Shown here piece after piece: positions 33,601 to 57,570 of a stretch of 64,000 nt of DNA. The notes beneath the pieces were generated by a model. The model was not told the DNA's origin, did no database searches, and saw only the letters and a program-made list of their open reading frames with translations. The position numbers and the translations under genes were made by a program. The stretch lies in IMG/VR virus record IMGVR_UViG_3300046703_000335, positions 62,001-126,000 of that record. The stretch is one strand, 5' to 3'. How positions within the stretch are numbered: the stretch's first letter is position 1; every line of letters starts with the position of its first letter.

Positions 33601-35262
33601 ATCACATAACTCTGTTTGAGTATCTATAGCTTGTACGATCGATTCTGAAGAATCTTTTACAAGTTCTCCTGTCCTGTTTATTGCTATATTATAGTCTGCC
33701 CCAGGAGCCTGTATACCTGTATACCCAAATTCATTAATAAATACTTGTGTTGCTTCATTAATAGTCAGAGATCTTTCCGGATCATTTATTTGAAATTGCT
33801 CTGTAAATTTACCATTAATAGAAAGGCTGTACTTATGAATATTGACATTTTTATAACTTATAGAATTTTCTTTTTTATAGAACTTTGAGGTTATATTTTT
33901 TACTACTGCTATCCCATTTTCTATAATAATATTATACCCCTCAGTGTAACCATCAGGGATAGCTTTTTCTTTTTTTACATATTCCTGAAAAGATGGCTTA
34001 GCTATAATATTCGAATCAAATTGCTTAAAATAATTCTGAGTTACTTCTTTAGGAATCACATAGAATTGAAAACTTTTAGTATACTTTTCTGCTTTAAAAG
34101 CTAATTCATTCCCTATTATTAAATCCTCTATCTCTACCCTATATTCGCCAGTATAGTCTCGAGTATATGCAAGGGTATTATCATTGTAAACTATAAGACT
34201 ACCATCAGTTAATACAATAATTTCTTCATCGAGAAAGATATCCGCTATAAAACCTGAATATCCCCAAGTAGAATCAATAATATCTGATGATACTGAAGAA
34301 TCTTTTACAGCATAATATCTTATATCATCCCCTATTGCGAAAATTTCTGGGGAAACAGGTTTATCGCCATCCTCATCCCGAATATATAAGAGAGTAGAAG
34401 AATTGTACACAAGGATAGTGCCATCAGTAAGATAGAATATCCCCGCTTCAAGATCGATTGCTGAAATAATCCCTGAAATCCACGTCTCTTCTGGGTCATC
34501 CTGAGCATATTTATATATTTTTTTTCCGAGATATGTGATCCGATAAATAAGGGATGTTCCATATACTTCATATTCCATATTTTGAGTTATATATGATGGC
34601 TTACATTTGCCAGTTCTATTAGCGAATTCATCTGTCCAAATCAATCGGGTATCATAGATGACATGAGCAGGCTTTATCAGATCAATAAAAAATTTTATAT
34701 CCTCAAGCATGACTCCAACGGTATTTGAAGATTCTGCTTCATCCATAAGAATATCAAAGAACATTTTATGGGTATCTTTAAGAGTATATGCAGAACCTTC
34801 CTGTCGAAGATTGAGGTATACTTCTCTTAAAATAACCGGTAATCCTAAGATGTCTGAAACCGATGATTCTATATTATCTTTACGACTACCTTTAAAAAAA
34901 GCATTTCTTATTTTTATCAAAAAATTTCTATAAGAGATATCATCAAGATTTTCATTTATGGCTCTATTACCAAGAAATAGAGAATCACCTAAAATCTGAA
35001 AAAGATACTCCGCTTTAGTTTCACTATGAAATTTGTCTTCATTAACATCTGAATTAGACATTTGTAATCGAGCAAATTCCTTAGCAACCGATCTAAAAAA
35101 TTCTCCGAGATTTGTATTCTGATTTTTTGGATAATTACTAGGCAAATTATTCAACATTCTTTGTTGAATAGATCGGGTAAGATTCAATAAATCCTTCTGA
35201 TATTCTATACCAGATTTGAACCTTTGAGCGGAAGGTTTATATACAGTTTCAAGAGATGTCAT
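30616..35262 (-). CDS. large baseplate wedge-type protein
   Basis: N-terminal LNNLPSNY...YRNFL...FIDLIKPAHV (tail protein I / wedge-like pattern); internal duplications; 1548 aa. Confidence 0.7.
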   Translation of the reverse strand: MTSLETVYKPSAQRFKSGIEYQKDLLNLTRSIQQRMLNNLPSNYPKNQNTNLGEFFRSVAKEFARLQMSNSDVNEDKFHSETKAEYLFQILGDSLFLGNRAINENLDDISYRNFLIKIRNAFFKGSRKDNIESSVSDILGLPVILREVYLNLRQEGSAYTLKDTHKMFFDILMDEAESSNTVGVMLEDIKFFIDLIKPAHVIYDTRLIWTDEFANRTGKCKPSYITQNMEYEVYGTSLIYRITYLGKKIYKYAQDDPEETWISGIISAIDLEAGIFYLTDGTILVYNSSTLLYIRDEDGDKPVSPEIFAIGDDIRYYAVKDSSVSSDIIDSTWGYSGFIADIFLDEEIIVLTDGSLIVYNDNTLAYTRDYTGEYRVEIEDLIIGNELAFKAEKYTKSFQFYVIPKEVTQNYFKQFDSNIIAKPSFQEYVKKEKAIPDGYTEGYNIIIENGIAVVKNITSKFYKKENSISYKNVNIHKYSLSINGKFTEQFQINDPERSLTINEATQVFINEFGYTGIQAPGADYNIAINRTGELVKDSSESIVQAIDTQTELCDQRANCVLSNYYEDSRKYYTWPDVQLTSGFFNITHEFEVIDPPEGAFDVGGWYYLSSDPNTFIMPLLPMLGSSGSPAVISDIVVYLNGKTIHNAVTFLDPWGGIVGLNFIPPFDSHLRIDYYFAKRYPEQVYYLRQIRNEIPNPTPGNLPGIFTVIGTSSVVPRLSWPFDVSNNTLYGDDLDYQMDKFPVLNQRGELATADEVDVQVGSIISSGTLKVINIDTNLNKSTLKSIDSDWVNVENGDTIVITIPNYLDNTQIYYIELVDLAQDTCVVPNRLPILNAEYSYVVIRFVDQPGGVTDTRPLLGHIRVNFLLPVNSYIKFNYYYTAQKRNYLMVPDAPIIDDNSLYGSSSYTPDTVYNSSNRYSLLVDQNPNAADQPYWDFEELLKIGYRYRAFSLSNSSVLNSERMLLNDYQKGKGRASFNQGPSNLNRYGLIYSPEYLYDKDKNVVLNDKYLNKNLPAITTLSPGTPIFPKTYTDDGHHKTFLLPNEIDTYDPDFDGGMDLKASFSIIEPDNSGIIDYNSICEFTTKKKINLYSDLKIVEQNNGGYDAPLATIDDTGTSIPFKFTYIDQYYPDREMRTTDYLDFINQVPSEIRYGDIFVINGSDIVKSKTVNFRSLNIGDLITIKDVPFREWVGPTTTGNWQIVYKDLDSTLIEIIDFQTGRFSRPYKGISGEYKYILTRSKTYAVDVGLAGGYGETGCLYGNIHRQLFINNALGFNYGLTGAQVSIYPYGYSRDFIDPDPDPYPRNPDNPWIGHPAVSYYDIEPSVIDGKTYITNRTKGVTGIVKTSYIIDAEGRSAGYTGAVGITGPVGALNLGITGPVEYANPRTLDGYDVYTIPSGDTGIYISYSEAEYRVQWRNFDQDIIIVNLTASGLIQEDPINMMDDIGDNILIPFWDVNALTIRELRFSGTIVTSTETILDSVLATSYPGGLILLTADQLDDIRRLSNPVLERPQYHLNDTNYKINTLLIRELMHDELSRVTEIQQFIPIV

Positions 35263-35265
35263 TCT

Positions 35266-35910
35266 TTAAAAACCTCTATCCAATAAAAATGCTGGTATTG
35301 GGTCTGCTTCAGCTCCCCGCATACCTGTAACTCCTTGTACACTAAAAGATTCTAAGCCTGTATAGCCTACCTTGCCCGTGACACCTTGAATACCCGTGAT
35401 CCCGATACTACCAGTTTCACCTATCATCCCTGTGATACCCTTATACCCTTCTTCGCCTTTATTACCTTGAGGAGTATAGTTACCATAACCATTATAAACT
35501 TCGATATCATTTTTAGTGAGGGCTTTAAATGCTTTAAGATTTGAACTACCATCCTGCTGCAGTTTTACCAATATCAGAGGCACTTTTCCAGATAAGTTAT
35601 CAAAAACTTTTACATCCCCGAAACTTTTTTTATTATAGGTGATGCTGGGTAAAACTTCTAACTGTTTTGTCTTATTAAGAACTATGAGTACATAGAGGAT
35701 ATCATTATAGTTATTAAATATTCTTCTTGATGTCCCCAGAACATATTGAAGAACAAGCTGTGCTACATCTACTCTAAAGCTACTAATTACTATCCACTTA
35801 TTGTCAACAATTACAGAACCACCCTTTATAAAAACAATGTTTTCACCATGTTCTCGGGTATCTTTAAGGGACGCAGAAAAATCTTTTTGATTCTTAGATA
35901 AAAAGGTCAT
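35266..35910 (-). CDS. collagen-like (G-x-T) virion protein
   Basis: C-terminal GxxGxT repeats (GITGMIGETGSIGITG...); N-domain paralogous to 35944-36591. Confidence 0.75.
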   Translation of the reverse strand: MTFLSKNQKDFSASLKDTREHGENIVFIKGGSVIVDNKWIVISSFRVDVAQLVLQYVLGTSRRIFNNYNDILYVLIVLNKTKQLEVLPSITYNKKSFGDVKVFDNLSGKVPLILVKLQQDGSSNLKAFKALTKNDIEVYNGYGNYTPQGNKGEEGYKGITGMIGETGSIGITGIQGVTGKVGYTGLESFSVQGVTGMRGAEADPIPAFLLDRGF

Positions 35911-35943: not shown

Positions 35944-36591
35944 CTACACCAGTACATCAAAGGGGATGTAAATATCCCAGTTTATACCTGTCATGCCTTT
36001 AAGTCCCTTATCCCCTAATTTTGCATTAACTAAAGGCCCTGAGCTACCTGTTCCTCCCACATAACCTGTATATCCTTTGAATCCCCTTAACCCTGTTATC
36101 CCTATCATCCCAGTTTCTCCGGATATGATACTATCTTCTCCTACAATTCCCTTAAGATTTTTATCTGCAATATTACCTGTACCTGAAAAGAAAATAATAT
36201 TCTCGTTCTTTACTGGTTTATGCCCGTAGATGATATCTAATGTACCATCTTGAACAAGAATCAATCCTATAAGAGGTAACGCAGTAAAAGTATCCGGGGG
36301 TGGTACTGCAGATAGAGTAGTAAAAAGAACATGAGTACCCTCAAGTACTGTTACCCCATTATTTGGATCTAAACAAATAAGGAGATATACTGCATAATTT
36401 CTGTCTTTAAAAAATCTTGTTCTATTTCCGACTACGACACTTGTGATATAATCTCTGATTTTAAAAATAGTTCCGGAAAAATTGATCCAGGCATTATCTA
36501 TGACGAAAGAACCTGCATTAATACGAATAGCATCGTTTGATAATATAGGAATAGATTCTGCTGATATTTTTTCTGATTTTTGTTTTAACAT
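35944..36591 (-). CDS. collagen-like (G-x-T) virion protein
   Basis: ATG 36591 with GAGG RBS (track start 36681 overlaps the upstream gene); GSFVIDNAWI/PLIGLILVQDG parallel GSVIVDNKWI/PLILVKLQQDG of 35266; Gly-x-Thr repeats. Confidence 0.75.
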   Translation of the reverse strand: MLKQKSEKISAESIPILSNDAIRINAGSFVIDNAWINFSGTIFKIRDYITSVVVGNRTRFFKDRNYAVYLLICLDPNNGVTVLEGTHVLFTTLSAVPPPDTFTALPLIGLILVQDGTLDIIYGHKPVKNENIIFFSGTGNIADKNLKGIVGEDSIISGETGMIGITGLRGFKGYTGYVGGTGSSGPLVNAKLGDKGLKGMTGINWDIYIPFDVLV

Positions 36592-36634
36592 AAAATGCCT
36601 CTTAATACGAAATTTATAGTATAAAAATGATCCA

Positions 36635-38833
36635 TTATATTTTATATTTAATCTTAATCCCGACATTATTACGAGAAGCATTTACTTTATCACTTAAATA
36701 CATTAATATATCAGGTTCCGGGGCAATATCAGGTGTAGCTATCCCAGAAACAATAATATAGTGGACTTTTGTTTCTGAATCACTATTGAAAGAGCTACTG
36801 GCAACTAAAGTAACCGTATACTCTCCAGGTGAGCTATAAAAATGTATAGGATTTTGTTCTGTTGAAAAATGAGAATCTCCAAAATCCCAATACCAGGATG
36901 AGATATTACCTTTTGATAGGTCAATAAATTGAGCTGATAAAGTTGAATATCCCGTCCTTGGTTCTGCAAAGAAATCTGCAGTAGAAAATACCGTTATATA
37001 ATTAGTTTTTGTCTCAGTATCACTTGCTTCACTATTATAGGCTATTAAAGTTACTGTGTAATTATTTGCATCTGTATATATATGCACTGGATTCTGTAGA
37101 GTAGAATGAAGGGAACCATCCCCAAAATCCCAATCCCAGAAAGTAGGCTCACCTAATGACTGATCTGTAAAATGCACTGTTAAATCTGCTGGGCCTACCT
37201 GGTTATTAGATGAAAAATCTGCTACCATATCAACTGATATATCGTGGGCGACAGTAGCTTCATTAGTCCCATCATTAACAATTAATATAACTGTATGTAC
37301 TCCAGCTTGAGTATACACATGAATGGGATTTTGATCTGTAGAATGAGAAGAGCCATCACCAAAGTTCCAATTCCATGATATAGGATGACCTAATGATTGA
37401 TCTGTAAATTGCACTAATAAGTTAGCAGGCCCTGATGAGGGGGTGCTAATAAAATCAGCTATTAGTGGGGGTGCTACGGTGATATAGTCGGGTTTTGTTT
37501 CAGTTGATGTGGAATAGCCATCTGAAACAATTAAAGAGACAGTATATATACCCGCATTTGTATAGCTATGAGCGGGATTTTCTATAAAAGAATGAGGAGT
37601 GGCATCCCCAAAATTCCAATCCCAAGTTGTAGGAGTACCAAAGGATGTGTCCGTAAATTGTACCGGGACACCCCCGGCAACTGATGTAGGTATACCATAA
37701 AAGTCTGCGAGTACAGATGCAGATATAGTTATGTAATCAGGTTTTATTAGTGTGTCGTATTCAGTCATACTATGGGCAATTAAAGTAACTGTATACGTCC
37801 CTGGAGTGAGATAGATATGTGTGGGATTTTGAGCTGTAGAATGAAGGGATCCATCCCCAAAATCCCAGTCCCAGGAGGTAATTGTCCCGGTAGGTATACT
37901 TATATCAGTAAAAGATATAATATTACCTGTAAAAGCAGATAGAGGTGCACCATAAAACCCTACCAAGATAGAAAGTGTTATCTGTTCATTTCCTGACCAA
38001 GGAGACAAAAGTAACAAAGAGCTATTTACCGATCTCACTCTATAATAATATGTCCCGGTAGCAAGAACAAAATCAGAGATAGCTATAAGAGGGGTAGATA
38101 TTGATACAGGTAATGGGAATGTTGGATTAGTATCCCTATCGATAATATAGCTATCAGCGTCTACAACAGCATTCCAACTTAAAGATATCTCATTTGTATC
38201 CCCTACTTGAGATACATTAAGATTTAAGGGGGTAGCAAGAGTATAACTCTCAATATAAACATTTGGTGGTGATGCTACATCTAAATAAGTTATCTCAAGA
38301 GCAGTCCTGTCACTATAAGAATAGATATCAAATTGATTTAATCGAGAACCCCCCCAATTTAGGTCACCTAATACTGGAGGATCTGATAATCTTATATTCT
38401 CGTACCCAATTGATTTAAATTCATTTGTATTATATAGAGCAGCTATTCTTACTGGTGACAAATTACTTATAAAAACACTAATAGAATTTATATCAGTAGT
38501 GATATTTAATTTAGAATATGTAAGTACTGGTATGGAAGCTGTATAGGGCTCAAATTCATATAAGGACAAATTATCTTGGAGATCTACTATCCATACCCAA
38601 AGTCTATTTGAATCTATAGATAGATCCAAATTTAAAGCAGCAGTAAGTACGTAACTTTTTACAATTAAAGCATCTAACTCATGACGAGAACCACCGTACT
38701 CTTTTAAAAATAATCTACTATACCCTAATTGTAAAGTCCATAGAGTACCCTTAGCAAGTATACCTTGAGGCTGGGATTCAATTCCCAAGGTACTTGCAGG
38801 ATATTCAATTCTATCAGATGATGGTATACTCAT
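36635..38833 (-). CDS. FN3 plus 5x PKD domain virion surface protein
   Basis: LSWNAV...YYYRVRSVN (FN3); five ADF...F.D.S...W.W(D/N)FGD...QNP.H.Y..G.YTV.L units. Confidence 0.88.
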   Translation of the reverse strand: MSIPSSDRIEYPASTLGIESQPQGILAKGTLWTLQLGYSRLFLKEYGGSRHELDALIVKSYVLTAALNLDLSIDSNRLWVWIVDLQDNLSLYEFEPYTASIPVLTYSKLNITTDINSISVFISNLSPVRIAALYNTNEFKSIGYENIRLSDPPVLGDLNWGGSRLNQFDIYSYSDRTALEITYLDVASPPNVYIESYTLATPLNLNVSQVGDTNEISLSWNAVVDADSYIIDRDTNPTFPLPVSISTPLIAISDFVLATGTYYYRVRSVNSSLLLLSPWSGNEQITLSILVGFYGAPLSAFTGNIISFTDISIPTGTITSWDWDFGDGSLHSTAQNPTHIYLTPGTYTVTLIAHSMTEYDTLIKPDYITISASVLADFYGIPTSVAGGVPVQFTDTSFGTPTTWDWNFGDATPHSFIENPAHSYTNAGIYTVSLIVSDGYSTSTETKPDYITVAPPLIADFISTPSSGPANLLVQFTDQSLGHPISWNWNFGDGSSHSTDQNPIHVYTQAGVHTVILIVNDGTNEATVAHDISVDMVADFSSNNQVGPADLTVHFTDQSLGEPTFWDWDFGDGSLHSTLQNPVHIYTDANNYTVTLIAYNSEASDTETKTNYITVFSTADFFAEPRTGYSTLSAQFIDLSKGNISSWYWDFGDSHFSTEQNPIHFYSSPGEYTVTLVASSSFNSDSETKVHYIIVSGIATPDIAPEPDILMYLSDKVNASRNNVGIKIKYKI

Positions 38834-38834
38834 A

Positions 38835-41800
38835 TTATGCTGTAAATTGAGTATAAGTATATGTTAATGTCATGCTTTTACCTGCATCCGCTGAATTAAA
38901 GAAAAAATCCCCGCTATTTGTAGAGAAGTACGTACCAGCTGTAGGAGTGATAGCATAGAAGAATACACTACTTCCAAATAACCCTGTTGTACCTATATCT
39001 ATATAAATACCCCCCAGAGCATTTACATATGTAGTAGCTAATCTAATTGTGGTAGTATTATAATTAATAGCATAATATGTTTTTCCTTCTTCAAGAGGAT
39101 AATAAAGAGAACCAGGCGTTGTAGTAGTTGAAGAGGAATATAATGTTACTGGAGTCCCTGTAGGTATATTTGCCGCCATTGCTACTAAATCTGTTGCGGG
39201 AGTTATAGAAGCTGTTCTTTGAGTGGGTGCATACTGCGTATATGCCGTAATTCCTTCATATACTTCAGTAGTATAATCAGAAATATCGATATCTCTAAAA
39301 TTTGGATCTGATGCTTCCGGAATAGTAATCTTATATGGTACGGATACCGATATAGAAGCGCTATAACCCGTAACCACTATAGCCTTACAAAAAAATTGTT
39401 TAGCCTTCCATTGCAATGTTTGTAGATTGTCTTTTATTTGATAAGGACCATGTACAATATTAAAACTTTCATTTAATACAAATTGAGTATCCCAAGAAGA
39501 GCCCGTAGCATTATTAAAATCCACTGTTAACCCATTAACTAATGTATGTGTAGCTGTTTTAGGAATTTCTCTTGGAGTACTAACACTCTTAACCCATGCA
39601 GACCCATCCCACCCATAAGATATTGGATTTGGAAATTTAGGGACAAATAGCATACTATTCCAAATAAAAATATTATTATCATTTCCATCTACGTCTATTT
39701 TACCCCTACGTAAAGCACCCAATGACCACCCAAAATAAATTGATAGATATCCAGTTGAGCTACCTGTAGACAAACCCTGGACCGAAGAATTACCTACACC
39801 TATTGTATAGGTTTCGAGAGTAACATAATATCCTGATGAGCTTTCTAAATAAATCATAAAAAATTTAGTACTACTAAGTTGAACATAGTGACTTATGGTA
39901 TGACCCACATTAATACTTTTAGCAAATGTTTCTACCTGTGAATAAGAGCCTGTTCCTTTACCGGTAACTGTGACAGTATATATAAAAGTAGCATTAGCCG
40001 TAGAAAAAATAATATTTGAAGTACCAGTAACTAAAGCACAGCTATAGCAAGTTATAGCTATTCGATACCATCCTATACCATCATCCAACACCCAAGCATT
40101 ATCATTAACTTGACCATAAGCATCCCCTCCCTTAAGTACTCTCCCATTATAGGCATCTAATTGACCAGCACCTATATCATAGTATGTGGCGACCATACCT
40201 TCTAAAGCTTGCCCTACGCCACTAATATATTGTGTAGCTGTTAAGGTACTTATATTTATTCTTGATAAGCCTGTTGCATGCCCAGTCCATAAATATCCTG
40301 TGATAGGATCCATGCACATATCTTTTATTACAGAAGATATCATACCTGTGATGGTAAGTAAAACTGGATCTACAGTAGGTGTTGCAAAAGTATATTCATA
40401 GATGCCATCATTAGTAGCTATATACATCTTTAATGCTGTGTATACAGAAGATATTACTTTAGTAGATCCATTACCAAATTTACATAAAGCTTGTGATGTC
40501 TCAATTGTATTAAATGCCCACCGACATATATTATTAATTAGTCCTTTTCTACTTTGCTGTATGGAATAAATATAATTGCCATTTTTAGCTGTACCTCGTA
40601 GCATAGACGCAGATCCTAATAGATTATTATAAAAATAAAATTCATTACCTATAACTGTATTAGTATTAGAAACATAATCCCCTTCAGCGTATTCGTTAGT
40701 ACTACTTAAATAAAGAGGCATAACATAACCTGCTATATCTACAGCCATGCTCAAATTATTTAGTACTGTAAAATAGGGAATGACAGTAGTATAATTCCAA
40801 GGCTCTAATTCAAGATTATATCTCCCGGTATTTTGACGAGTAAAAGTATGATTACCTAATCCTTGTGTGGTCAGTGTTATATACGTGCCCGCCAAAGCAT
40901 TAGCATATGAAGTAGCTAATCTTATATGTGTACTATCTATACGAATTATATAATAATCTGTAAGTAATGCTAACGGTGAAGGAAGAGTATCAGTAGTAGT
41001 TATCCTATATATATCCCCGGTAGTAAAATCTTGAGCTATGGTAATCTGTGAATTACCTGTATTAACTGCTGTATAGGGGACAGTTTCATTTATTAAATCT
41101 GTAGCATCTCCAGTTTTTGCTATTCTTATTCTAGCAATAACAGGATATTTATTAGTAGGAGTACCTGATATAGTGGCAGTACCTTGAGAGGATGCTGGAA
41201 ATGATGGATCACTAAATAAAAATGCGTCTCTTGTACCTGGGTGTACAAAAATTCTAGCTACTGATGGTGCCAAACTTTTATTTTGAGAATAACCATAGAT
41301 ACTATACATATAACGATTCACTGGGGAACTAATACTCCCATTTCTACCAAACACCGTAGAACCTATAGGCCCAACTATATCAGCTACAGCAAAATTTTTA
41401 AGTATAGCTTTAGATAATCGATGTCCATAATTATAGTATGTGTTCCAATCTGGAAAGTCAGCACCACTAACTTTATATAAATAGTTACAATATCTAGATA
41501 TATTATTAGTATTTTCTGGAGGAAGAAAAGGAGTAAGTATAAAGCAATCAGATTGATCTTTTTGTCCAAAACGAATAATCCTGGTAAGCATCGCCTGTTT
41601 TAAAGCATATTCTACTGATCTATTATTTGGTGTATTATACCCTATGCTAACATCAAGTAAAAAAAACACAGTATACTTGACATATAGGTATTGGTTAGTA
41701 TTTTGGGTAATAGGGGTGGATAGTTGTATGAAAGATACAAAATTAGGAACTGATGTTTCTTGACCCGCAAATTCAAATATTTTAATTCCTATTATATTAA

Positions 41801-42149
41801 TAGTACGTGGGGCTCCAGGAGGAGCGAAGTTATTATCACAATATTTACTAAGGACATTCCAATCGACATTAGATTGATATCCTACAGCAGCACCTGTAGC
41901 AATAATATTAAACATATTAGCTTTACCATACTTACGATAATCATCAGATCCTATAGTGGAATCGGATAATAAGATAGCCATTGTATTTGTGTATACACTA
42001 CTATCGGAACTGCTTACACTATAACCAGTCTTAAATATCCATTCTATAAATACATCTGAAATAATATTCCATTGAGTGCCCTCTTGATCTATCTCACCCG
42101 TATCAGCATTAATTAACTTCCAGTCGTATTTACCTTTAAGTTTAAACAT
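38835..42149 (-). CDS. tail fibre / receptor-binding protein
   Basis: 1104 aa beta-rich; two copies of ..PL....YY.I....T.IRLAT.Y.NAL.G.YI motif; central propeller-like segment (MYIATNDGI, LWTGHATGLSRI). Confidence 0.65.
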   Translation of the reverse strand: MFKLKGKYDWKLINADTGEIDQEGTQWNIISDVFIEWIFKTGYSVSSSDSSVYTNTMAILLSDSTIGSDDYRKYGKANMFNIIATGAAVGYQSNVDWNVLSKYCDNNFAPPGAPRTINIIGIKIFEFAGQETSVPNFVSFIQLSTPITQNTNQYLYVKYTVFFLLDVSIGYNTPNNRSVEYALKQAMLTRIIRFGQKDQSDCFILTPFLPPENTNNISRYCNYLYKVSGADFPDWNTYYNYGHRLSKAILKNFAVADIVGPIGSTVFGRNGSISSPVNRYMYSIYGYSQNKSLAPSVARIFVHPGTRDAFLFSDPSFPASSQGTATISGTPTNKYPVIARIRIAKTGDATDLINETVPYTAVNTGNSQITIAQDFTTGDIYRITTTDTLPSPLALLTDYYIIRIDSTHIRLATSYANALAGTYITLTTQGLGNHTFTRQNTGRYNLELEPWNYTTVIPYFTVLNNLSMAVDIAGYVMPLYLSSTNEYAEGDYVSNTNTVIGNEFYFYNNLLGSASMLRGTAKNGNYIYSIQQSRKGLINNICRWAFNTIETSQALCKFGNGSTKVISSVYTALKMYIATNDGIYEYTFATPTVDPVLLTITGMISSVIKDMCMDPITGYLWTGHATGLSRINISTLTATQYISGVGQALEGMVATYYDIGAGQLDAYNGRVLKGGDAYGQVNDNAWVLDDGIGWYRIAITCYSCALVTGTSNIIFSTANATFIYTVTVTGKGTGSYSQVETFAKSINVGHTISHYVQLSSTKFFMIYLESSSGYYVTLETYTIGVGNSSVQGLSTGSSTGYLSIYFGWSLGALRRGKIDVDGNDNNIFIWNSMLFVPKFPNPISYGWDGSAWVKSVSTPREIPKTATHTLVNGLTVDFNNATGSSWDTQFVLNESFNIVHGPYQIKDNLQTLQWKAKQFFCKAIVVTGYSASISVSVPYKITIPEASDPNFRDIDISDYTTEVYEGITAYTQYAPTQRTASITPATDLVAMAANIPTGTPVTLYSSSTTTTPGSLYYPLEEGKTYYAINYNTTTIRLATTYVNALGGIYIDIGTTGLFGSSVFFYAITPTAGTYFSTNSGDFFFNSADAGKSMTLTYTYTQFTA

Positions 42150-42160
42150 AATCTATTCAC

Positions 42161-43498
42161 CTATGTGTTAGTAATTGTTATATACACTTTATAACCTGAT
42201 GCTATGGCATTAGTTAATGAGTTATCTGATTGAAACGTTTTAGTTTCTTCATACTCAGCCGTCTTTAATAAAGATATTTGATAACCAGAGGCTATGGCAT
42301 TAGTTAATGAGTTATCTGATTGAAATGTTTTAGTTTCTTCATATTCAGCCGTCTTTAATAAAGATACTTGATAACCTGAAGCTAATGCATTAACTATAGA
42401 ATTGTCCTTAGCAGTTACATTGTAAATATTATCAGCTAAGGTAATTAATGCAGGAAAACTAAATATATATATTTGCTGATAATTTACTGGGTCTGTAATA
42501 AATGGCATAGTAAATAAATGAGTATGCACCGTACAACGCAAGTACTTCAAACCAACAGTCCCTATCCAGGGAACAACCCTATATGCAAGATAATATGCAT
42601 TAATGTGCGGAATTGTATATGTAGCTTCTACGGTATAGGTACCAGAATTATATTTAAGTAAATCATATGTGACTTCTCCATATGCATATGGAAGATTAAT
42701 CCCAGCAATATCCGGCAGTATTATATAAGGTTGACTATTTATAAAACAAAAATCAGGAGTATTTAAAGGATATTCATTACTTGTAAGTAAATTATAAGAT
42801 GTGTATCCCGCAGATAAAGCAACTACAACAGAATTTTCAGGATCATTATTTAAAGTAATGTTACTTACTGAAATATTTATATTAGGTAAATAATCCCATG
42901 TTAATTCATTAGTGGGATCAAACATACGGATATAACTAATACTGTCTTTTTTATAGGACAAATATATTTTATTGGTACTTACATCATAATATGCTTCGGG
43001 TTCTTCCCCGGTATTTAATCGATATTCATAATCATCCCATACCCAATTAGACCCTGATAATATCTGCTTTCTTATATAGACATAATACCCCGTATGTTCA
43101 ACCTCTTCAATTCTTGTAATAGATGAATTACCTGATTGTACATATGCCAATACAATAAAAGTAGCAGCTTGAGCCATAGTCAAGATATTAGCAATATGCA
43201 ATATACCAACATTATCAGAATAAACTACCTGATAGGTATTAGGAGAGGCAGTTAATGTACCAGCTCCCCATGTAACAGAAGACCCATTAATAGTCCCTGA
43301 ACCAGCTTCAATATTTACTATAAAAGAGGGGGCTGTAAATGTTATACGAGAAAAGGAACTTTTTCCTGTAGTTAAAAATTTTGTATAAAAAATCATTTGC
43401 TGCCCAGTAGGCCCTACTATGATACTAGGATGACTATCAGGTCTCCTGTTATCCGTATCAAAAGTGATCTTTTGAGTTGTAGAAGGTAGATATGCCAT
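42161..43498 (-). CDS. virion structural protein with C-terminal 30-aa tandem repeats
   Basis: 445 aa; DNS..NA.ASGYQ.SLLKTAEYEETKTFQS about 2.5 times. Confidence 0.7.
   Translation of the reverse strand: MAYLPSTTQKITFDTDNRRPDSHPSIIVGPTGQQMIFYTKFLTTGKSSFSRITFTAPSFIVNIEAGSGTINGSSVTWGAGTLTASPNTYQVVYSDNVGILHIANILTMAQAATFIVLAYVQSGNSSITRIEEVEHTGYYVYIRKQILSGSNWVWDDYEYRLNTGEEPEAYYDVSTNKIYLSYKKDSISYIRMFDPTNELTWDYLPNINISVSNITLNNDPENSVVVALSAGYTSYNLLTSNEYPLNTPDFCFINSQPYIILPDIAGINLPYAYGEVTYDLLKYNSGTYTVEATYTIPHINAYYLAYRVVPWIGTVGLKYLRCTVHTHLFTMPFITDPVNYQQIYIFSFPALITLADNIYNVTAKDNSIVNALASGYQVSLLKTAEYEETKTFQSDNSLTNAIASGYQISLLKTAEYEETKTFQSDNSLTNAIASGYKVYITITNT
42191..42405. repeat. 90-nt in-frame tandem repeat (about 2.4 copies)
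   Basis: Units start ataacc at 42191, 42281 and 42371; near-identical DNA. Confidence 0.9.
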
Positions 43499-43555
43499 AG
43501 ATATTTTACCAAAGCACTAAATTTTTATTATTACAAGCCCTATAAACTATATACT

Positions 43556-43567
43556 AATAGATTATTA
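43556..43567 (-). promoter_or_regulatory. putative late promoter motif TAATAATCTATT
   Basis: One mismatch to the motif; intergenic before 42161-43498. Confidence 0.5.
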
Positions 43568-43580
43568 TATTAAGGGATAA

Positions 43581-43910
43581 TTAATCGAATATAAGCGAGG
43601 GACCTTGAACCCTGGTAAATCCTCCTCCATTTTCAATTGTAGAAGAGATCTCTGAAGTATTCTGCGTAGCAATAGTTATATACTGCGCTTTAGAAATTGA
43701 GTCATTCAATAACCCTTCATAGGCAATAAGAGACACAGTATAATTACCATAATAGTTGTATGTATGTGAAGGATTCTGATCCGTTGAATGTGGGCTACCA
43801 TCCCCAAAATCCCAATCCCACGAAGTTATCTCTCCAATAGAAAGATCAGTAAATTGGACGGTAAAAGGGATATAACCAGAAGTTTTATCAGCAGTGAAAT
43901 TTGCAACCAT
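43581..43910 (-). CDS. single-PKD-domain protein
   Basis: ANF...VQFTDLS...WDWDFGDGS..STDQNPSHTY; C-terminal GGGFTRVQGPSLIFD. Confidence 0.88.
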   Translation of the reverse strand: MVANFTADKTSGYIPFTVQFTDLSIGEITSWDWDFGDGSPHSTDQNPSHTYNYYGNYTVSLIAYEGLLNDSISKAQYITIATQNTSEISSTIENGGGFTRVQGPSLIFD

Positions 43911-43919
43911 GATATACTT

Positions 43920-46331
43920 TCAATCGAATATTAAAGTGGGACCCAATTCTCTTACAAATCCAGTCCCGGATTCTTCTAACCTAATATTTATGTAGTGTTC
44001 TTTTATTACTCTATTATAGGTAATACCATCCGAGACTGTCAATATAACTGTATAAATTCCCTGACTATAATAAGCATGCACAGGATTCTGATCCGTAGAA
44101 TGAGAAGAACCATCCCCGAAATCCCAATCCCAAATAGAAACAATCCCAATAGATAAATCTGTAAATTGTATAGGAGTACTTATAAATCCTATTCTTGGGT
44201 CACCTATAAAATCAGCAACAATATTTCCGGATACATAAATATAATCTATTTTTGTCTCAGAATCGCTACTCGAAGTATTTGAAGCTGTTAAACTAACTGT
44301 ATAGTATCCTGCTACCGTATATAAATGAATAGGATTCTGATCCGTAGAATGAAGAGATCCATCACCAAAATCCCAATCCCACGAAGTAGGACCACCTATA
44401 GATAAATCTGTAAATTGTACAGACATTCCTGGAACACCACTTCTGGGGATAGCTGAAAAATCAGATAGCATATTTACAGTTATATATCCAGGTTTTGTAA
44501 TAGTATCTGAAGTAACCCCACGAGTACTTATCAAAGTAACCGAATAAACTCCTGCTATCTCATACAGATGGGTAGGATTCTGGTCCGTAGAATGAAGAGA
44601 ACCATCTCCGAAATCCCAATCCCAACTTGTAGGATCACCTATAGATAAATCTGTAAATTGTACTGAAAGTTCTGCGAAACCTGATGTTATATCAGCGCTA
44701 AAATCTGCTACAATTATTATTGTGGACTCTGTCTCATAAGCACCCATATCTGGAGGTGATTTTCTTAGAATGCCTATGATATCATCAATAGGGGTATTCG
44801 CGTTAATTAACCCTGTCGCATAAGATGGGGAAGTATTTAGGAGTCTCAGTGGATAAGGGGGAACTCCTTCAAACTGAGGATTTGCAGTTATTTCTGTTGG
44901 ATCAAGTGCTATTGGGTCACCATTATTCGCGTAATTGTATCCTGCAGCATTATTGTTACTATGAATAAATGTATGTATGTTGCTTGGATTTTCAATATAT
45001 AGATCAAGATACAATCCTAATCCTGAATCAACGATATTATTGAAAATTAAAAATGATTCAATGTAACCACTTGAATCATCCGCATAAACATAAACTGCAT
45101 TTGTGCTTGCACCCAGATTATAAAAAGTATTGTTAATAACATTTACATTCATTATCTCAGAATAATACTCAATATCCATGCAAGTGAAATCTGTTGCATT
45201 ATTCATAAAAACATTATTAAATATATTAACAAATCCTGGGCAATTATCTACAATAAAATACATCACCCCATCAAAAGTATTTTTATAGACACTGATTGGA
45301 ACAATTGTACCAGATATTGTTATACTTGATGTCCCCGTATTACTTACAAATTGATTATTTCTTATCGAAATAGATTCTGTACAACCACCATCTATATAAA
45401 TTGGGTCACTAAAATTTCTGAAAGTATTATCATAGATATCTTTTAAAGGATTGATAAAGGATTGGTATGCAGTCTGATTAAGTCCTTCTATATCTAAATT
45501 TCGGGGAGTTAATCCTACGAATGCCTCAGAATGAAGACTCCATGATTTCTGACTCCCATAACTGGTTATGATAGCGCCATTAAAATTAAAACCATTATAT
45601 ATCTTGTCACCATTAACTACTGTAGGTTCTGTGATAGTTGAAGATACATATATAACATCTGAATTGATAATGTCTGTATTATAGCTTCTCCCTACAGCGC
45701 CAACTTCCTCACTTACAACTACAGTACCATCAGGGGAGGGGTTCACCTCGTATATTGCAATTTTAGGTGGTGTTCCTAATGCAAATAAACTTGACCAACT
45801 ATTAACACTATGGGTATCCGTAGCATATTTAGTGCCGTCCACATAAAATTCTATAGTTGTCGCAGTAATCAAAAAAGTATATAACCGGCTTACTCCTGAA
45901 GTAAATTTAGGAAATGTGGCTAATACCGTAGCTCCCTTAAGTATCTGGCATGTGTAGGGTATTACTGGATTACCTGGGAGTAAATCTGCTGATGAGATAG
46001 TACTAAAAGAATAGTTCCCCAAATAAAAACGTGTTGGACCAAATACTGTACCTGATGTAGCTACATAGAATCCAGGAAAAATCGCATAAGTAGTAAGGTC
46101 TTTTTGTGTAATTGTGCAGCTTATCGCAACAGCTTGATCTATAATTGGAAATGGAGGAATCCGTACAGGACTGAAAGTTACATCATAACTGGTATTAGTA
46201 ACAGTTACATTTATAGGTGTAAATTCATAACCTTGTAATTGCTTGGCTAACCTGTTAAGTGATAATGCTGCATTTTCTTCAGTATTATATGGGAAAGTCT
46301 CCGTACCAGTATCTTTTATATAATAAGCCAT
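43920..46331 (-). CDS. parallel beta-helix (pectin-lyase-like) plus 3x PKD protein
   Basis: IRNNQF/VYKNTF/IFNNVF/VINNTF/IFNNIV helix repeats, PDMGAYE cap, three PKD units; C-terminal GTGFVRELGPTLIFD. Confidence 0.85.
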   Translation of the reverse strand: MAYYIKDTGTETFPYNTEENAALSLNRLAKQLQGYEFTPINVTVTNTSYDVTFSPVRIPPFPIIDQAVAISCTITQKDLTTYAIFPGFYVATSGTVFGPTRFYLGNYSFSTISSADLLPGNPVIPYTCQILKGATVLATFPKFTSGVSRLYTFLITATTIEFYVDGTKYATDTHSVNSWSSLFALGTPPKIAIYEVNPSPDGTVVVSEEVGAVGRSYNTDIINSDVIYVSSTITEPTVVNGDKIYNGFNFNGAIITSYGSQKSWSLHSEAFVGLTPRNLDIEGLNQTAYQSFINPLKDIYDNTFRNFSDPIYIDGGCTESISIRNNQFVSNTGTSSITISGTIVPISVYKNTFDGVMYFIVDNCPGFVNIFNNVFMNNATDFTCMDIEYYSEIMNVNVINNTFYNLGASTNAVYVYADDSSGYIESFLIFNNIVDSGLGLYLDLYIENPSNIHTFIHSNNNAAGYNYANNGDPIALDPTEITANPQFEGVPPYPLRLLNTSPSYATGLINANTPIDDIIGILRKSPPDMGAYETESTIIIVADFSADITSGFAELSVQFTDLSIGDPTSWDWDFGDGSLHSTDQNPTHLYEIAGVYSVTLISTRGVTSDTITKPGYITVNMLSDFSAIPRSGVPGMSVQFTDLSIGGPTSWDWDFGDGSLHSTDQNPIHLYTVAGYYTVSLTASNTSSSDSETKIDYIYVSGNIVADFIGDPRIGFISTPIQFTDLSIGIVSIWDWDFGDGSSHSTDQNPVHAYYSQGIYTVILTVSDGITYNRVIKEHYINIRLEESGTGFVRELGPTLIFD

Positions 46332-46355
46332 TAAATTTGCACCAATCTTAAATTT

Positions 46356-46709
46356 TTATCTTGTCACTCTTTTTATCTCTATCCCAACATTCCTTTTGTT
46401 AACAATACCTATACCCCATAAATACACTTTTTGTTGCAGTATCGGCGCTATATCATATGTAGCACTACTATTAACTTGGATATAGCCATTTTTTACTGTT
46501 GTATTTTGATCCCCTGTATAAGATATAGTTAATGTTACTGTATATATCCCTGGATGAGAATAATAGTGTGTTGGATTTCTTTCTGAAGAAAAATGTTTAT
46601 CCCCAAAGTTCCATAACCAATTTTCAATAATACCTGTGGAATTATCTATAAAATGCACAGTTAACGTTGATGTGCCATTTCTTGGGGAACCTGTAAAATC
46701 AGCCTGCAT
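46356..46709 (-). CDS. single-PKD-domain protein
   Basis: ADF...VHFIDNS...WLWNFGD...NPTHYY..PG.YTVTL. Confidence 0.88.
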   Translation of the reverse strand: MQADFTGSPRNGTSTLTVHFIDNSTGIIENWLWNFGDKHFSSERNPTHYYSHPGIYTVTLTISYTGDQNTTVKNGYIQVNSSATYDIAPILQQKVYLWGIGIVNKRNVGIEIKRVTR

Positions 46710-46734: not shown

Positions 46735-47247
46735 TTATATCTTGTCTAAAGTCATATTTATACCTACAGTATAAGACCCATAGTCAAGGTAATTATGAGA
46801 GATAGATCGACCAGTTGCTCCATGAGTATCTCCTAAATCCCATTGCATTCCGGTATATTGATATCCGGTAGGAGCTAAACTATTATCATCAAGATATACT
46901 AATAAGGGTTTTTCTCCTCTTAAGGGTTCTCCAGAAAAATCCATTTTACCAAGAACCACAAGATGGCTGTCTATATCATCTATCTTATACCAATCATTAC
47001 CATTATTCATAATAGAAAAAATAACTTTATGATATCCATAAGTACGGTATGTGTGCTTTGGTTTTGGGATGTCACTATTAGTACCATCTCCAAAATCCCA
47101 ATAAAACTTTTTAGGCTCAAAACTTAATCCAGTATACCCAAATACATATTCTGATGGTATAACATCTATTATAGGAAAGCTCTCAGATATTAAGCCACCC
47201 GTGTCAGGATCAATTTTACTAATTAATACTATACCAGTCTCAGCCAT
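46735..47247 (-). CDS. protein with two PKD-like domains
   Basis: FYWDFGDG...PKHTY and MQWDLGD...SHNYLDYGSYTV. Confidence 0.8.
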   Translation of the reverse strand: MAETGIVLISKIDPDTGGLISESFPIIDVIPSEYVFGYTGLSFEPKKFYWDFGDGTNSDIPKPKHTYRTYGYHKVIFSIMNNGNDWYKIDDIDSHLVVLGKMDFSGEPLRGEKPLLVYLDDNSLAPTGYQYTGMQWDLGDTHGATGRSISHNYLDYGSYTVGINMTLDKI

Positions 47248-47272
47248 GGTAAACCTCTCTTATACCTTCTAT

Positions 47273-47929
47273 TTACAGAGTACCAAGATACCCCGCTTTA
47301 CCTCTACCTTCAGCATAATAGGAAGCTATGTCTTTATTAACCGCCCATATTCTTAATTCATCCATTTTCATAGTACTATTAAGTAATATATCAGTCCCGG
47401 TACCAGAGAATGTTATAGGGCTACTATTCTCAAATCTTATAACTTCAAGTTCTTTCAAATAATAGGAAAAACTTCCTACATACATTTTTCCAGTATATCT
47501 GTTAAAACCAATAAACGCCCAATTACCTGGTTCAGCTACTTTATTTTTGGATCTAAAGATATTATCATTATCCTCAAATACCAGATGAAAAGACTGATCA
47601 AGATATAATCTCCAGTAACATCCTGAAATTGTATCAAAAGATTGTGCTACGATGAAATCCGGAATGGGGATGTATGTGTCAACAATTATATAGCTACTTT
47701 TAGTAACTGAGTATTGATCTGCATTCGTTTGAGCTATTAAAATTACATCATATTCCCCAGGATAATAATAAGTATGGTTTATTGTCTGAAGATCACTTCC
47801 CTCAACAATAATACCATCTCCGAAAATCCATTTTCTATGTACTATAGTCAAATCCGTAGGATCATTAAAAGTCGTAGATAGATATCCAGATCCTGTCCTG
47901 TATGTTGCAACTATGTCCGGTTGTGTCAT
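47273..47929 (-). CDS. PKD plus LamG-like domain protein
   Basis: KWIFGDG...HTYYYPGEYDVIL; C-terminal GNWAFIG...MDELRIW. Confidence 0.75.
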   Translation of the reverse strand: MTQPDIVATYRTGSGYLSTTFNDPTDLTIVHRKWIFGDGIIVEGSDLQTINHTYYYPGEYDVILIAQTNADQYSVTKSSYIIVDTYIPIPDFIVAQSFDTISGCYWRLYLDQSFHLVFEDNDNIFRSKNKVAEPGNWAFIGFNRYTGKMYVGSFSYYLKELEVIRFENSSPITFSGTGTDILLNSTMKMDELRIWAVNKDIASYYAEGRGKAGYLGTL

Positions 47930-47934
47930 ATTAT

Positions 47935-49044
47935 TTATGCTATCGTTATTTGTTCAGATTTTATATGAGATCCTGCTGAGTTAGTCGCTGTCAATTTAAC
48001 CACATATATTCCAGTAGATCCAAAAGAGTGTGTTATTATTCCAGAGTTATAAATATACCCATCAATATCCCATGTAAGTGTCTTTGGTAAATACAACGAA
48101 GCATCCATAAATCTTATAGGGTATCCTACTATACCAGTATAAGTTTCATAAATAAAATCAGCTATTGGGGATTGATTAACATTTATCCATGCCTGTATAG
48201 TTCCTGTAAATCCGATATATTTATTATTACGATATCCGGATATCCCTCCACGATACTGTATACTGTGACAATTATCTATGATGCCTTCTTCAAGAGTAAG
48301 AACTGATTGACCTTGATCAATTATCTCTATAGAAGTACTTGACCCAGTTTCGTTATTAAAAATTATCCCTGTTAATCCTGCTCCAGTTGCACCCCACACA
48401 AGATCTCTTTCGTAAGAAGAATAATCAGTTAAATTTACATCATTAGTTTTAAATTTCAGATAAAGCAAGAGATCTAAATTTTGATATACTCCTGTTTCTC
48501 CTTGGATACCTGTAGATCCCATCATACCCACACAAGTGTCCCCTTGGATACCTGTATACCCAATTGGGCCTTCTATACCAGTATAACCCTGATAACCTGT
48601 ATACCCGTAAAATCCTGTATCACCTACTTTACCTTGAGCACCTCTATCACCTTGTATAAATTCCGAAGTAATCGCAAAGGTGGACATTTTTGAATATAAA
48701 TTTATCTTTTTTACTTCAAAACTGGATAAAGATTGCTGGAGTATAAACTGTCCAATAGGTAGGGCATTAGTTAAAGCATCACTATCGCATGAATCTATGT
48801 ATGATACAGATTTCTTAACTGTATCAAAGATAAATTTTCCAGTATCTATAGAATAATAGATATTTACAGCGGCATAATATCTTTTTTCCATTGGGATAAT
48901 AAAAAAAGATTGTTGTCTCAATGGTAAAACAATATTTACAATAGATACAATCTTATTATTATATAGTACATTTCCTATATTAATTATATAATCTATAGAG
49001 CCGTCAAAATTTTTACGCTCGAATATGTTATTTGCATTATCCAT
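47935..49044 (-). CDS. collagen-like (G-x-T) protein with C-terminal PKD
   Basis: GDTGFYGYTGYQGYTGIEG... repeat; LLLYLKF (LamG-like start); PIADF...HSF..TGIYVVKLTATN. Confidence 0.75.
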   Translation of the reverse strand: MDNANNIFERKNFDGSIDYIINIGNVLYNNKIVSIVNIVLPLRQQSFFIIPMEKRYYAAVNIYYSIDTGKFIFDTVKKSVSYIDSCDSDALTNALPIGQFILQQSLSSFEVKKINLYSKMSTFAITSEFIQGDRGAQGKVGDTGFYGYTGYQGYTGIEGPIGYTGIQGDTCVGMMGSTGIQGETGVYQNLDLLLYLKFKTNDVNLTDYSSYERDLVWGATGAGLTGIIFNNETGSSTSIEIIDQGQSVLTLEEGIIDNCHSIQYRGGISGYRNNKYIGFTGTIQAWINVNQSPIADFIYETYTGIVGYPIRFMDASLYLPKTLTWDIDGYIYNSGIITHSFGSTGIYVVKLTATNSAGSHIKSEQITIA

Positions 49045-56820: not shown

Positions 56821-56823
56821 ACG

Positions 56824-57570
56824 TTAATAAACCAATCGTTGTCTTGTAAGGGCATTCATACTCAAATATTGTGAGTATTCTATTGGATTGTTACTCTGTG
56901 ATGTAAATGTCACTGTAACCAATATCAAAGTTGGGTCGTCAGTTTCAGTTATATCAATTTTTAAAAGCTTACCAAAAAGCTCCCCAGGTTCAAATTTTCT
57001 CCCAGAAGCTTGCATTTGCTTTTGGACAGTTCTAAGCTTATCTATAGCAGAACTTATCTGTTCACGAATTCGAGTATATAAAAGTTGTCTATCAGATATC
57101 TTTGTACCAATCAAGGAATAAAGATCTGTACCATACCATGAATGAAAAACATTAGAAGAAATCTTTGTAATTATAATTTTTTCTAACTGCTGAAGAAGTA
57201 ATATCTCTTTGGATATTACTTCGATATCCCCACGCCCATTAATTAGCAAGTCATCGACAGTTTTCACACCAAGACATTTCGGGCAGGTATCTGATAAAGT
57301 CACATATAAGAATTCTATGATAGGATCAAAGTTCTTAATCTTATTATTAAATTCGATATTTGAAGTAACTATAAGAGTCATTGCCTGTCGAATACTCTTA
57401 ATAGTATACGTCGAATATGGATATACAACCCCATTTATGCGAACCCTTAAGGAAGTAGCTGATGCCAGGGGGTATGGTAAATATACCGTCTTCCTGTCCA
57501 TTTCAAGCTGCGCCCGAGCCCATAAAATCTTATGATCACAATAATTTTGTAGTTTAACATCGTATGACAT
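56824..57570 (-). CDS. baseplate gp25/W-like protein
   Basis: LLQQLEKIIIT..SSN.FHSWYGTDLYSLIG...DPT.I.V.V pattern; directly upstream of baseplate J. Confidence 0.75.
   Translation of the reverse strand: MSYDVKLQNYCDHKILWARAQLEMDRKTVYLPYPLASATSLRVRINGVVYPYSTYTIKSIRQAMTLIVTSNIEFNNKIKNFDPIIEFLYVTLSDTCPKCLGVKTVDDLLINGRGDIEVISKEILLLQQLEKIIITKISSNVFHSWYGTDLYSLIGTKISDRQLLYTRIREQISSAIDKLRTVQKQMQASGRKFEPGELFGKLLKIDITETDDPTLILVTVTFTSQSNNPIEYSQYLSMNALTRQRLVY

What the first reader, a model, noticed from the sequence alone, without database searches (positions are those of the whole stretch)
36635..46709. PKD adhesin cluster with two shared C-terminal docking tags
Unrelated-length PKD proteins share short C-terminal peptides in pairs. 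43581 ends GGGFTRVQGPSLIFD and 43920 ends GTGFVRELGPTLIFD. 36635 ends DIAPEPDILMYL...RNNVGIKIK and 46356 ends DIAPILQQKVYL...KRNVGIEIK. Each tag occurs on one long multidomain protein and one single-PKD protein. Inference: these are virion-anchoring peptides (e.g. beta-strand addition) that let long and short adhesins compete for the same sockets, forming a plug-in surface display system.
Basis: partly seen in the sequence, partly recalled or inferred. Interest (0 to 1): 0.6.

Follow-up and report, generated by a model that had tools for sequence, protein, structure and literature searches.

The report
Split anchor domain on phage adhesins
The two shared C-terminal peptides are real and conserved. 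They are the two halves of one small, undescribed C-terminal domain that related huge phages carry whole, always encoded just upstream of a collagen-like fibre gene, so in this phage the tagged PKD proteins probably pair up to rebuild that domain and dock on the virion.

Summary
p803 and p109 end in G.GF.R..GP.LIFD (tag A). p732 and p117 end in T[PY]DIAP…YL…NVGI.IK (tag B). Neither tag occurs anywhere else in the 210-kb contig.

The interpretation needs changing. In relatives, a B-like segment, a short Pro/Ser-rich loop and tag A lie in one chain, forming a ~60-residue module that is always at the extreme C-terminus. A profile search found 58 cluster representatives among 1.84 billion proteins. 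A profile of these intact modules ranks the four window proteins first to fourth: the B tags align to positions 3-45 and the A tags to positions 47-69.

AlphaFold2 folds a module-only protein as one compact six-strand domain (pLDDT 90.5, pTM 0.69). No fold or family match was found. The window tags are cut at its surface loop.

The window's clade holds only halves, two A and two B per genome in three sublineages. In all 15 lineages examined, the gene bearing the module or a half sits immediately upstream of a homologue of the collagen-like protein p245.

Best reading (inferred): the module anchors variable payloads to this fibre assembly, and here an A hairpin completes a B half in trans. Binding was not shown.

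The parts
36635..38833 (-). p732: N-terminal region, an FN3-like stretch (by eye), 5 PKD domains and the B half of the module. Lies directly upstream of p245.
   Evidence: Module profile positions 3-45 align to residues 692-729.
36638..36736 (-). Tag B of p732 (last 33 residues): strands 1-4 of the module, no A half.
   Evidence: The nearest intact counterpart is P0059/L081, which shares STPDIAPEPD and then continues into tag A.
46356..46709 (-). p117: one PKD domain plus the B half.
   Evidence: Its PKD is closest to the last PKD of p732 (50% identity, shared one-residue deletion), so PKD plus B is a duplicated cassette.
46359..46460 (-). Tag B of p117 (last 34 residues).
   Evidence: (profile positions 3-42).
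43920..46331 (-). p803: N-terminal region with beta-helix-like repeats, 3 PKD domains and the A half.
   Evidence: A weak Pfam Beta_helix hit falls on the 615-aa homologue.
43923..43967 (-). Tag A of p803 (last 15 residues): the last two strands of the module.
   Evidence: profile positions 52-69, E 1.7e-4.
43581..43910 (-). p109: one PKD domain, a linker and the A half.
43584..43628 (-). Tag A of p109 (last 15 residues).
   Evidence: profile positions 47-69, E 2.7e-6.
35944..36591 (-). p245: about 145-aa N-domain, short collagen triple-helix region and a conserved C-terminal tail (GI[NS]W.I.[IV]P[FL]). Candidate docking partner. The true start is probably Met31 of the listed ORF 35944-36681.
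   Evidence: A p245 homologue lies immediately downstream of the module or half-tag gene in all 15 lineages examined.
35266..35910 (-). p214: paralogue of p245 (N-domain plus collagen region). Always follows p245.
30616..35262 (-). p1548: large conserved protein that closes the conserved block. Used as the phylogenetic marker.
38835..43498 (-). p1104 and p445: two genes of unknown function lying between the tagged genes. No tags and no family hits.
   Evidence: A p1104 homologue occurs in G009; p445 was seen only in the window's clade.
46735..49044 (-). p170 (2 PKD), p218 (PKD plus lectin-like C-terminal part) and p369 (collagen-like, N-domain related to p214): untagged neighbours of the same cluster.
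53461..57570 (-). Baseplate context: p1119 (Baseplate_J_C, weak, on its 86%-identical homologue) and p248 (baseplate wedge subunit, phrog_43).

Best explanation
Tags A and B are the two portions of one ~60-residue C-terminal domain (the 'module'). B comprises strands 1-4 plus a short helix, and A is the final beta-hairpin. Relatives carry the module intact at the extreme C-terminus of proteins with very different N-terminal payloads: PKD strings, beta-propeller, LamG, beta-helix, DUF285, or none. The module most likely ties these payloads to a conserved fibre assembly in the baseplate region, probably the collagen-like protein p245 that is encoded immediately downstream in every lineage. In the window's clade the module is cut at its surface loop, so two proteins keep only B and two keep only A. 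Most likely one B-bearing and one A-bearing protein associate, with the A hairpin completing the truncated B sheet in trans, as in donor-strand complementation. The rebuilt module then docks where an intact-module protein docks in relatives, placing two payloads at one site. SHOWN: the tags, their conservation, their homology to complementary halves of one module, the predicted compact fold, the 2A+2B count, and the gene order. INFERRED: docking itself, p245 as the partner, and A-B pairing.
For: (1) A degenerate DNA search for tag A in IMG/VR found 13 sites, every one the end of an ORF and every one following a PKD domain. In 7 proteins a T[YP]D.AP…G[VI]R..I segment lies just upstream in the same chain. 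(2) A profile search of 1.84 billion representatives found 58 proteins, nearly all with the complete module at the very C-terminus. P0059 bridges both window tags in one chain. (3) The 59-sequence module profile gives p109 E 2.7e-6 (positions 47-69), p803 1.7e-4 (52-69), p732 1.6e-3 (3-45) and p117 0.13 (3-42). These are ranks 1-4, and the halves do not overlap. In the reverse test, a profile of B-only tags hits only intact-module proteins, right upstream of their tag A. (4) AlphaFold2 folds the module-only protein P0031 with mean pLDDT 90.5 and pTM 0.69, strands at 5-7, 20-24, 28-32, 36-40, 51-54 and 61-63. The window tags are cut in loop 41-50. (5) No intact module exists in the 210-kb contig. 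The count is two A plus two B in G000/G004, G003/L088 and G001/G002. (6) The hydrophobic positions of tag A stay conserved although the tag cannot fold alone. Tag A is 73-93% identical where the rest of the protein is 43-75% identical. (7) On the p1548 tree the half-only phages form one clade (100/100) nested among intact-module phages. (8) A p245 homologue lies immediately downstream in all 15 lineages examined. (9) Stand-alone 64-65-aa module genes occur at the same position, so the module has a role of its own next to p245.
Against: No binding evidence of any kind was obtained. The 2A+2B count comes from one clade, so it is effectively one evolutionary event. L081, about as close to the window as G001, keeps an intact module at the p732 position. 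Loss of A from p732 may therefore be recent and simply tolerated, and the tree does not include that lineage. With only 9 aligned sequences AlphaFold2 modelled the module poorly (pLDDT 52-71). The confident model depends on a 38-row alignment, and I could not inspect its contacts. The B-half homology of p117 is weak on its own (E 0.13). The link to p245 is gene order only.
Confidence: 0.45

Rival explanations
1. A and B are two independent docking peptides, each inserting by strand addition into its own socket or sub-site on the virion. The two A proteins compete with each other, as do the two B proteins.
For: Each half is conserved on its own in three sublineages. The two halves are joined by a variable Pro/Ser-rich loop in intact modules. 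Sharing of one anchor by a long and a short Ig-type protein is known for Hoc-like proteins (PMC10385173).
Against: The intact module is predicted as one compact domain, not two linear motifs. Neither a two-strand hairpin nor a sheet lacking that hairpin is expected to be stable alone. Equal numbers of A and B are not predicted by this model.
Confidence: 0.2
2. The module is mainly a structural or assembly partner of the p245/p214 fibre (a cap, clamp or folding nucleus), and payloads are incidental additions. In the window's clade either half is enough for that role, so no A-B pairing is needed.
For: Stand-alone module genes without any payload sit directly upstream of p245 homologues in three lineages. 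The gene order is invariant.
Against: It does not explain why both halves are kept, twice each, in every half-only genome seen. It also does not explain why single-PKD proteins with a half tag are maintained.
Confidence: 0.15
3. The tags are homotypic oligomerisation elements (mini-foldons). A pairs with A and B with B, so that each short PKD protein joins its long partner in a mixed oligomer.
For: Each tag is shared by exactly two proteins per genome. Tag A is a predicted beta-hairpin with a loose resemblance, recalled from memory, to the T4 fibritin foldon hairpin.
Against: No structural match to any solved chain, the foldon included (best Z 2.1). In relatives A and B are parts of one monomeric fold. 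Many genomes carry a single intact-module protein.
Confidence: 0.1
4. The half tags are decaying remnants of the module and have no function.
For: A close relative (L081) still has the intact form at the p732 position.
Against: The tags are as conserved as, or more conserved than, the flanking PKD domains across genomes whose marker protein p1548 is only 75% identical. No relic of the missing half is visible next to any tag. The same state appears in six independent assemblies.
Confidence: 0.04

Closest known systems
T4 Hoc and Hoc-like decoration proteins (PMC10385173)
   Same: A conserved C-terminal binding domain follows a string of variable Ig-type domains. Some phages encode a second, shorter protein with the same binding domain, or place that domain on an enzyme. 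That is the same 'one anchor, several payloads' logic.
   Different: No sequence or fold similarity was found to Hoc or any other family. The genes lie in a baseplate and fibre cluster next to collagen-like genes, not with capsid genes. The anchor is only ~60 residues, and in this clade it is split between proteins, which is not reported for Hoc.
Donor-strand complementation in chaperone-usher pili (established knowledge, not tested here)
   Same: An incomplete beta fold on one subunit would be completed by strands supplied by another subunit. This is the mechanism proposed here for B plus A.
   Different: Pilins lack one strand of an Ig fold and polymerise head to tail with a chaperone and an usher. 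Here the proposal is a two-strand hairpin completing a small non-Ig domain at the C-termini of two phage proteins. It is inferred, not shown.
Branched tailspike and tail-fibre adaptor systems of phages such as CBA120 and G7C (from my own knowledge)
   Same: Several receptor-binding or enzymatic proteins are hung on one virion site through small conserved docking domains.
   Different: Those systems dock through N-terminal domains (T4 gp10-like), whereas here the conserved element is at the extreme C-terminus. No homology was detected in PHROGs or Pfam.
SpyTag/SpyCatcher and other engineered split domains (from my own knowledge)
   Same: A short C-terminal strand peptide plus the rest of a small beta domain reassemble and join two proteins.
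   Different: Those pairs are engineered and covalent. This would be natural and presumably non-covalent, and it is unproven.

Membership tests
PKD domain proteins (PF18911 / PF00801) | Significant match to the PKD profiles | tested here: met
   p732 E 1e-73 (5 stretches), p803 6e-43 (3), p109 6e-16, p117 1.6e-13.
C-terminal module of this huge-phage family (defined here) | Match to the ~68-position module profile at the extreme C-terminus | tested here: met
   As halves only. The A tags match positions 47-69 and the B tags match positions 3-45, at ranks 1-4 in the genome. No protein in the contig has the whole module.
C-terminal module of this huge-phage family (defined here) | Gene immediately upstream of a p245-type collagen-like gene | tested here: met
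   p732 (B half) holds this position in the window. The same holds in all 15 lineages examined.
Hoc-like decoration proteins | String of Ig-type domains followed by a conserved C-terminal binding domain | tested here: met
   The architecture is seen in intact-module relatives. This is a resemblance of design only.
Hoc-like decoration proteins | Homology of the binding domain to that of Hoc | tested here: not met
   No PHROG, Pfam or NCBIfam family covers the module. No solved chain resembles the model: best Z 2.1, and no Foldseek match below E 1.
Hoc-like decoration proteins | Binding to capsid hexamers | not testable with these tools
   Needs virions. The gene context points to the baseplate and fibre region instead.
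Donor-strand complementation systems | An incomplete fold on one chain completed by strands of another chain | tested here: inconclusive
   The incomplete, complementary halves are shown. Their association is not.
Cell-surface sorting domains (T9SS C-terminal domain, PEP-CTERM and similar) | Match to the sorting-domain profiles | tested here: not met
   No such hit in Pfam or NCBIfam at E up to 0.1-1. All carriers lie in phage fibre clusters.
T4 fibritin foldon | Structural match of the C-terminal hairpin domain | tested here: not met
   No PDB match to the module model. The sequence resemblance was recalled from memory only.

The most novel reading that the evidence does not exclude
A natural split-domain 'tag and catcher'. 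In this clade a small anchor domain was divided at a surface loop, so that a 15-residue hairpin on one adhesin completes a four-strand remnant on another. With two A and two B carriers per genome, the phage could build up to four different two-payload units on one fibre socket from four genes.
Probability: 0.3. Interest if true: 0.75.

Novelty: new variant of a known kind. Interest (0 to 1): 0.6.

Why it matters
Phages decorate their particles with Ig-type adhesins, but how such accessory proteins are attached is known for very few systems, Hoc being the main one. This finding defines a new, rare anchor domain: 58 clusters among 1.84 billion representatives, no family and no fold match. It is limited to an uncultured lineage of huge phages, one record of which is 467 kb. 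It has a clear candidate partner, the collagen-like fibre protein p245, and a wide range of payloads. The split state would be a natural case of fragment complementation used to assemble virion adhesins. If that is confirmed, it gives a small pair of peptides (15 and about 34 residues) that could be tried as a protein-joining tool. It also gives a handle for predicting which proteins of such phages are exposed on the particle.

Tried and rejected
(1) Complex prediction on p117 plus p109 returned 'no answer' (score 0.00, controls not run). (2) The foldon idea for tag A was dropped because no structural match was found. (3) Sorting or secretion signals: no profile hit. (4) Gene conversion as the source of the tag similarity was rejected, since the DNA is 28/45 identical. 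(5) Remnants of the missing half next to the tags: none found in any frame. (6) A frameshift joining p732 to the ORF 35944-36681, which overlaps it by 47 nt, was considered. The extension upstream of Met31 is not conserved and homologues start at Met31. A 30-codon open stretch is unremarkable, so this was rejected. (7) Stand-alone module genes as artefacts of a recoded stop: the intervening stops are TAA (L085, L086/L087) or TGA with a frame change (L082), so they are separate genes. No alternative genetic code was used anywhere. (8) The first AlphaFold2 run on the 234-aa protein with 9 sequences gave a low-confidence module and was superseded. (9) The word-based protein searches found only close relatives. 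(10) Deposited phage genomes hold neither the module nor p245. (11) The Atlas feature search was blank. The read tools were not used, and no contig was taken for human.
Full report
WHAT IS THERE. The window is bases 62,001-126,000 of a single 210,408-bp viral contig with 35% G+C. Nearly all long ORFs are on the - strand. The region of the finding lies downstream of baseplate-type genes: p248 matches baseplate wedge phrog_43, and the 86%-identical homologue of p1119 has a weak Baseplate_J_C hit. It lies among collagen-like fibre genes p369, p245 and p214. In transcription order the genes are p369, p218, p170, p117, p803, p109, p445, p1104, p732, p245, p214, p1548.

p803 and p109 end in G.GF.R..GP.LIFD, with 10 of 15 residues identical. 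p732 and p117 end in a 33-34-residue stretch sharing T[PY]DIAP, YL and NVGI.IK. In six-frame translation of the whole contig the core motifs occur only at these four ORF ends. The similarity is at protein level, because tag A DNA is only 28/45 identical between the two genes. The PKD of p117 is closest to the last PKD of p732 (50% identity, with a shared one-residue deletion), so PKD plus tag B is a duplicated cassette. The PKD of p109 is closest to the first PKD of p803.

CONSERVATION. Close relatives carry the same tags at the same ORF ends: G004 (95% identity), G003/L088 (about 72-88%) and G001/G002 (p1548 75%). Tag A is 93% identical where the rest of the protein is 45-75% identical, and 73% identical where the rest is 43-49%.

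THE TWO TAGS ARE HALVES OF ONE DOMAIN. A degenerate DNA pattern for tag A plus a stop codon found 13 sites in IMG/VR. All are ORF ends and all follow a PKD domain. In seven of these proteins a segment resembling tag B lies directly upstream of tag A in the same chain, joined by a 7-10-residue Pro/Ser-rich loop. A profile of this ~68-residue module, searched against 1.84 billion cluster representatives, found 58 proteins at E up to 1e-3. One of them (P0042) is an odd repetitive hit. The others carry the module at the extreme C-terminus of proteins 64 to 2,062 residues long.

P0059 bridges the window's tags. Its B half shares the run STPDIAPEPD with p732, and it continues into GFVRDYGPTLIFD, close to the end of p803. 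A profile of 59 intact modules ranks the four window proteins first to fourth of 493 ORFs and of 5,213 six-frame segments. The A tags align to positions 47-69 or 52-69 (E 2.7e-6 and 1.7e-4). The B tags align to positions 3-45 or 3-42 (E 1.6e-3 and 0.13). In the reverse test, a profile of six B-only tags hit only intact-module proteins among 3,426 ORFs, apart from its own kind, and always just upstream of their tag A.

THE MODULE IS A COMPACT, UNDESCRIBED DOMAIN. AlphaFold2 on the natural module-only protein P0031 (64 aa, 38-row alignment) gave mean pLDDT 90.5 and pTM 0.69. It has six strands and one short helix. An earlier run with 9 sequences was not confident for this part. The window's tags are cut in loop 41-50, between strands 4 and 5. 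No Pfam, PHROG or NCBIfam family covers the module. No solved or predicted structure resembles it: best VIA Z 2.1, no Foldseek match below E 1, Atlas TM at most 0.43. Deposited phage genomes hold neither the module nor p245.

DISTRIBUTION OF STATES. The carriers belong to one family of huge phages. p1548 homologues are 46-75% identical across the records, and G008 is 466,729 bp and 98% complete by CheckV. By inference the window's contig is a fragment of a genome of similar size. There are three states.
- Intact module on a payload protein, one or two per record. Payloads include PKD strings, BNR-type beta-propeller, LamG and DUF285.
- Stand-alone module genes of 64-65 codons in three lineages. 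TAA or TGA stops separate them from the upstream gene, so they are real separate genes.
- Halves only, in the window's clade, always two A plus two B.
On a p1548 tree the half-only phages form one clade (100/100) nested in a ladder of intact-module phages, so the split is most simply a derived state. One caution applies. L081 is about as close to the window as G001 (p1548 N-terminus 91% identical, p214 homologue 77%), and it keeps an intact module at the p732 position. The state can therefore change over short evolutionary distances.

GENE ORDER. In all 15 lineages examined, the gene bearing the module, or a half of it, is immediately followed by a p245 homologue and then a p214 homologue. The p245 family is well conserved (64% mean column identity). 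It has a ~145-residue N-domain, a short collagen region and a conserved C-terminal tail. No solved relative of the N-domain was found by sequence.

MECHANISM. Shown: two complementary, non-overlapping, conserved halves of one predicted compact domain, equal numbers of each, no intact module in the contig, and invariable adjacency to p245. Inferred: the module anchors payload proteins to the fibre assembly built from p245 and p214, and in this clade an A hairpin completes a B remnant in trans, so that two proteins share one docking unit. I put this at 0.45.

The rivals are as follows.
- The module as a structural partner of p245 for which either half suffices (0.15).
- Homotypic oligomerisation of same-tag proteins (0.1).
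- Decaying relics with no function (0.04).
The single complex-prediction job gave no verdict and is listed only under things tried.

COMPARISON WITH KNOWN SYSTEMS. The closest in design is T4 Hoc, which has a conserved C-terminal binding domain after Ig-type domains, with second shorter versions and enzyme fusions in some phages (PMC10385173). Membership in the Hoc family is not supported, because there is no sequence or fold similarity and the genomic context differs. The proposed pairing resembles donor-strand complementation in pili, and engineered split domains, in principle only.

VERDICT. I classify it as a new variant of a known kind.

Noticed in passing
window 47273-47929 (p218) and its homologues in L040, L055, L077, L083, L088: p218 (PKD plus a lectin-like C-terminal part) carries its own conserved C-terminal peptide, RG[KR]A[GA][YF]L followed by 2-3 residues. 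The peptide is kept even in a homologue only 30% identical overall. It may be a third attachment peptide in the same cluster.
   Followed up: partly
L082 1245-1439; L085 302-499; L086 4032-4229; L087 1126-1323: Stand-alone 64-65-codon genes encode only the module, directly upstream of p245 homologues. The genes upstream of them share a different conserved C-terminal domain (W.PY.Y…LYNWRF…), which is also seen in a 354-aa protein of L083.
   Followed up: partly
window 35944-36681: The first 30 codons of this ORF overlap the end of p732 by 47 nt but have no counterpart in nine homologues, all of which start at the equivalent of Met31 (36591). The real gene is probably 215 codons long.
   Followed up: yes
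window 35947-35990 (C-terminal tail of p245) against strand 4 of the module: The conserved p245 tail GI[NS]W.I.[IV]P[FL] resembles the module's fourth strand and its exit, G[IV]R.[YI]IP. This could hint at strand pairing or mimicry, or it could be chance.
   Followed up: no
L035 10822-11223 against window 46356-46709; L088: In a phage about 95% identical overall (G004), the p117 counterpart is only 51% identical and 134 aa long. L088 lacks p170 altogether. The small PKD genes seem to be exchanged as cassettes.
   Followed up: partly
tag A in window, L040, L045, L088: Tag A comes in two subtypes, GGFTR and TGFVR[ED], with one of each per half-only genome. In G001 the subtypes are swapped between the long and the short carrier. 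Tag B also shows two subtypes. This would fit specific A-B pairs, but the sample is too small to judge.
   Followed up: partly
window 42161-43498 (p445): The C-terminus holds about 2.5 tandem copies of a ~29-residue repeat. No family hit was found, and homologues were seen only in the window's clade.
   Followed up: no
window 14552-18400: The DNA polymerase gene carries an insertion at about residues 704-866 that matches LAGLIDADG homing-endonuclease families. This may be an intein.
   Followed up: no
window 23038-24243: A transposase gene (phrog_506, E 4e-111) sits inside the phage genome between the replication and structural genes.
   Followed up: no
window 1433-1508: A tRNA-Ile gene with anticodon TAT.
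   Followed up: no
G009:C1:21533-26146 (L058): The p1548 homologue of this relative has one in-frame TGA. This could be a broken gene, a sequencing error or recoding.
   Followed up: no
genome 1-3476 (outside the window): A large protein at the contig end carries repeated NGNVGIG.TGP motifs typical of fibre proteins. It produced weak, spurious hits to the module profile.
   Followed up: no
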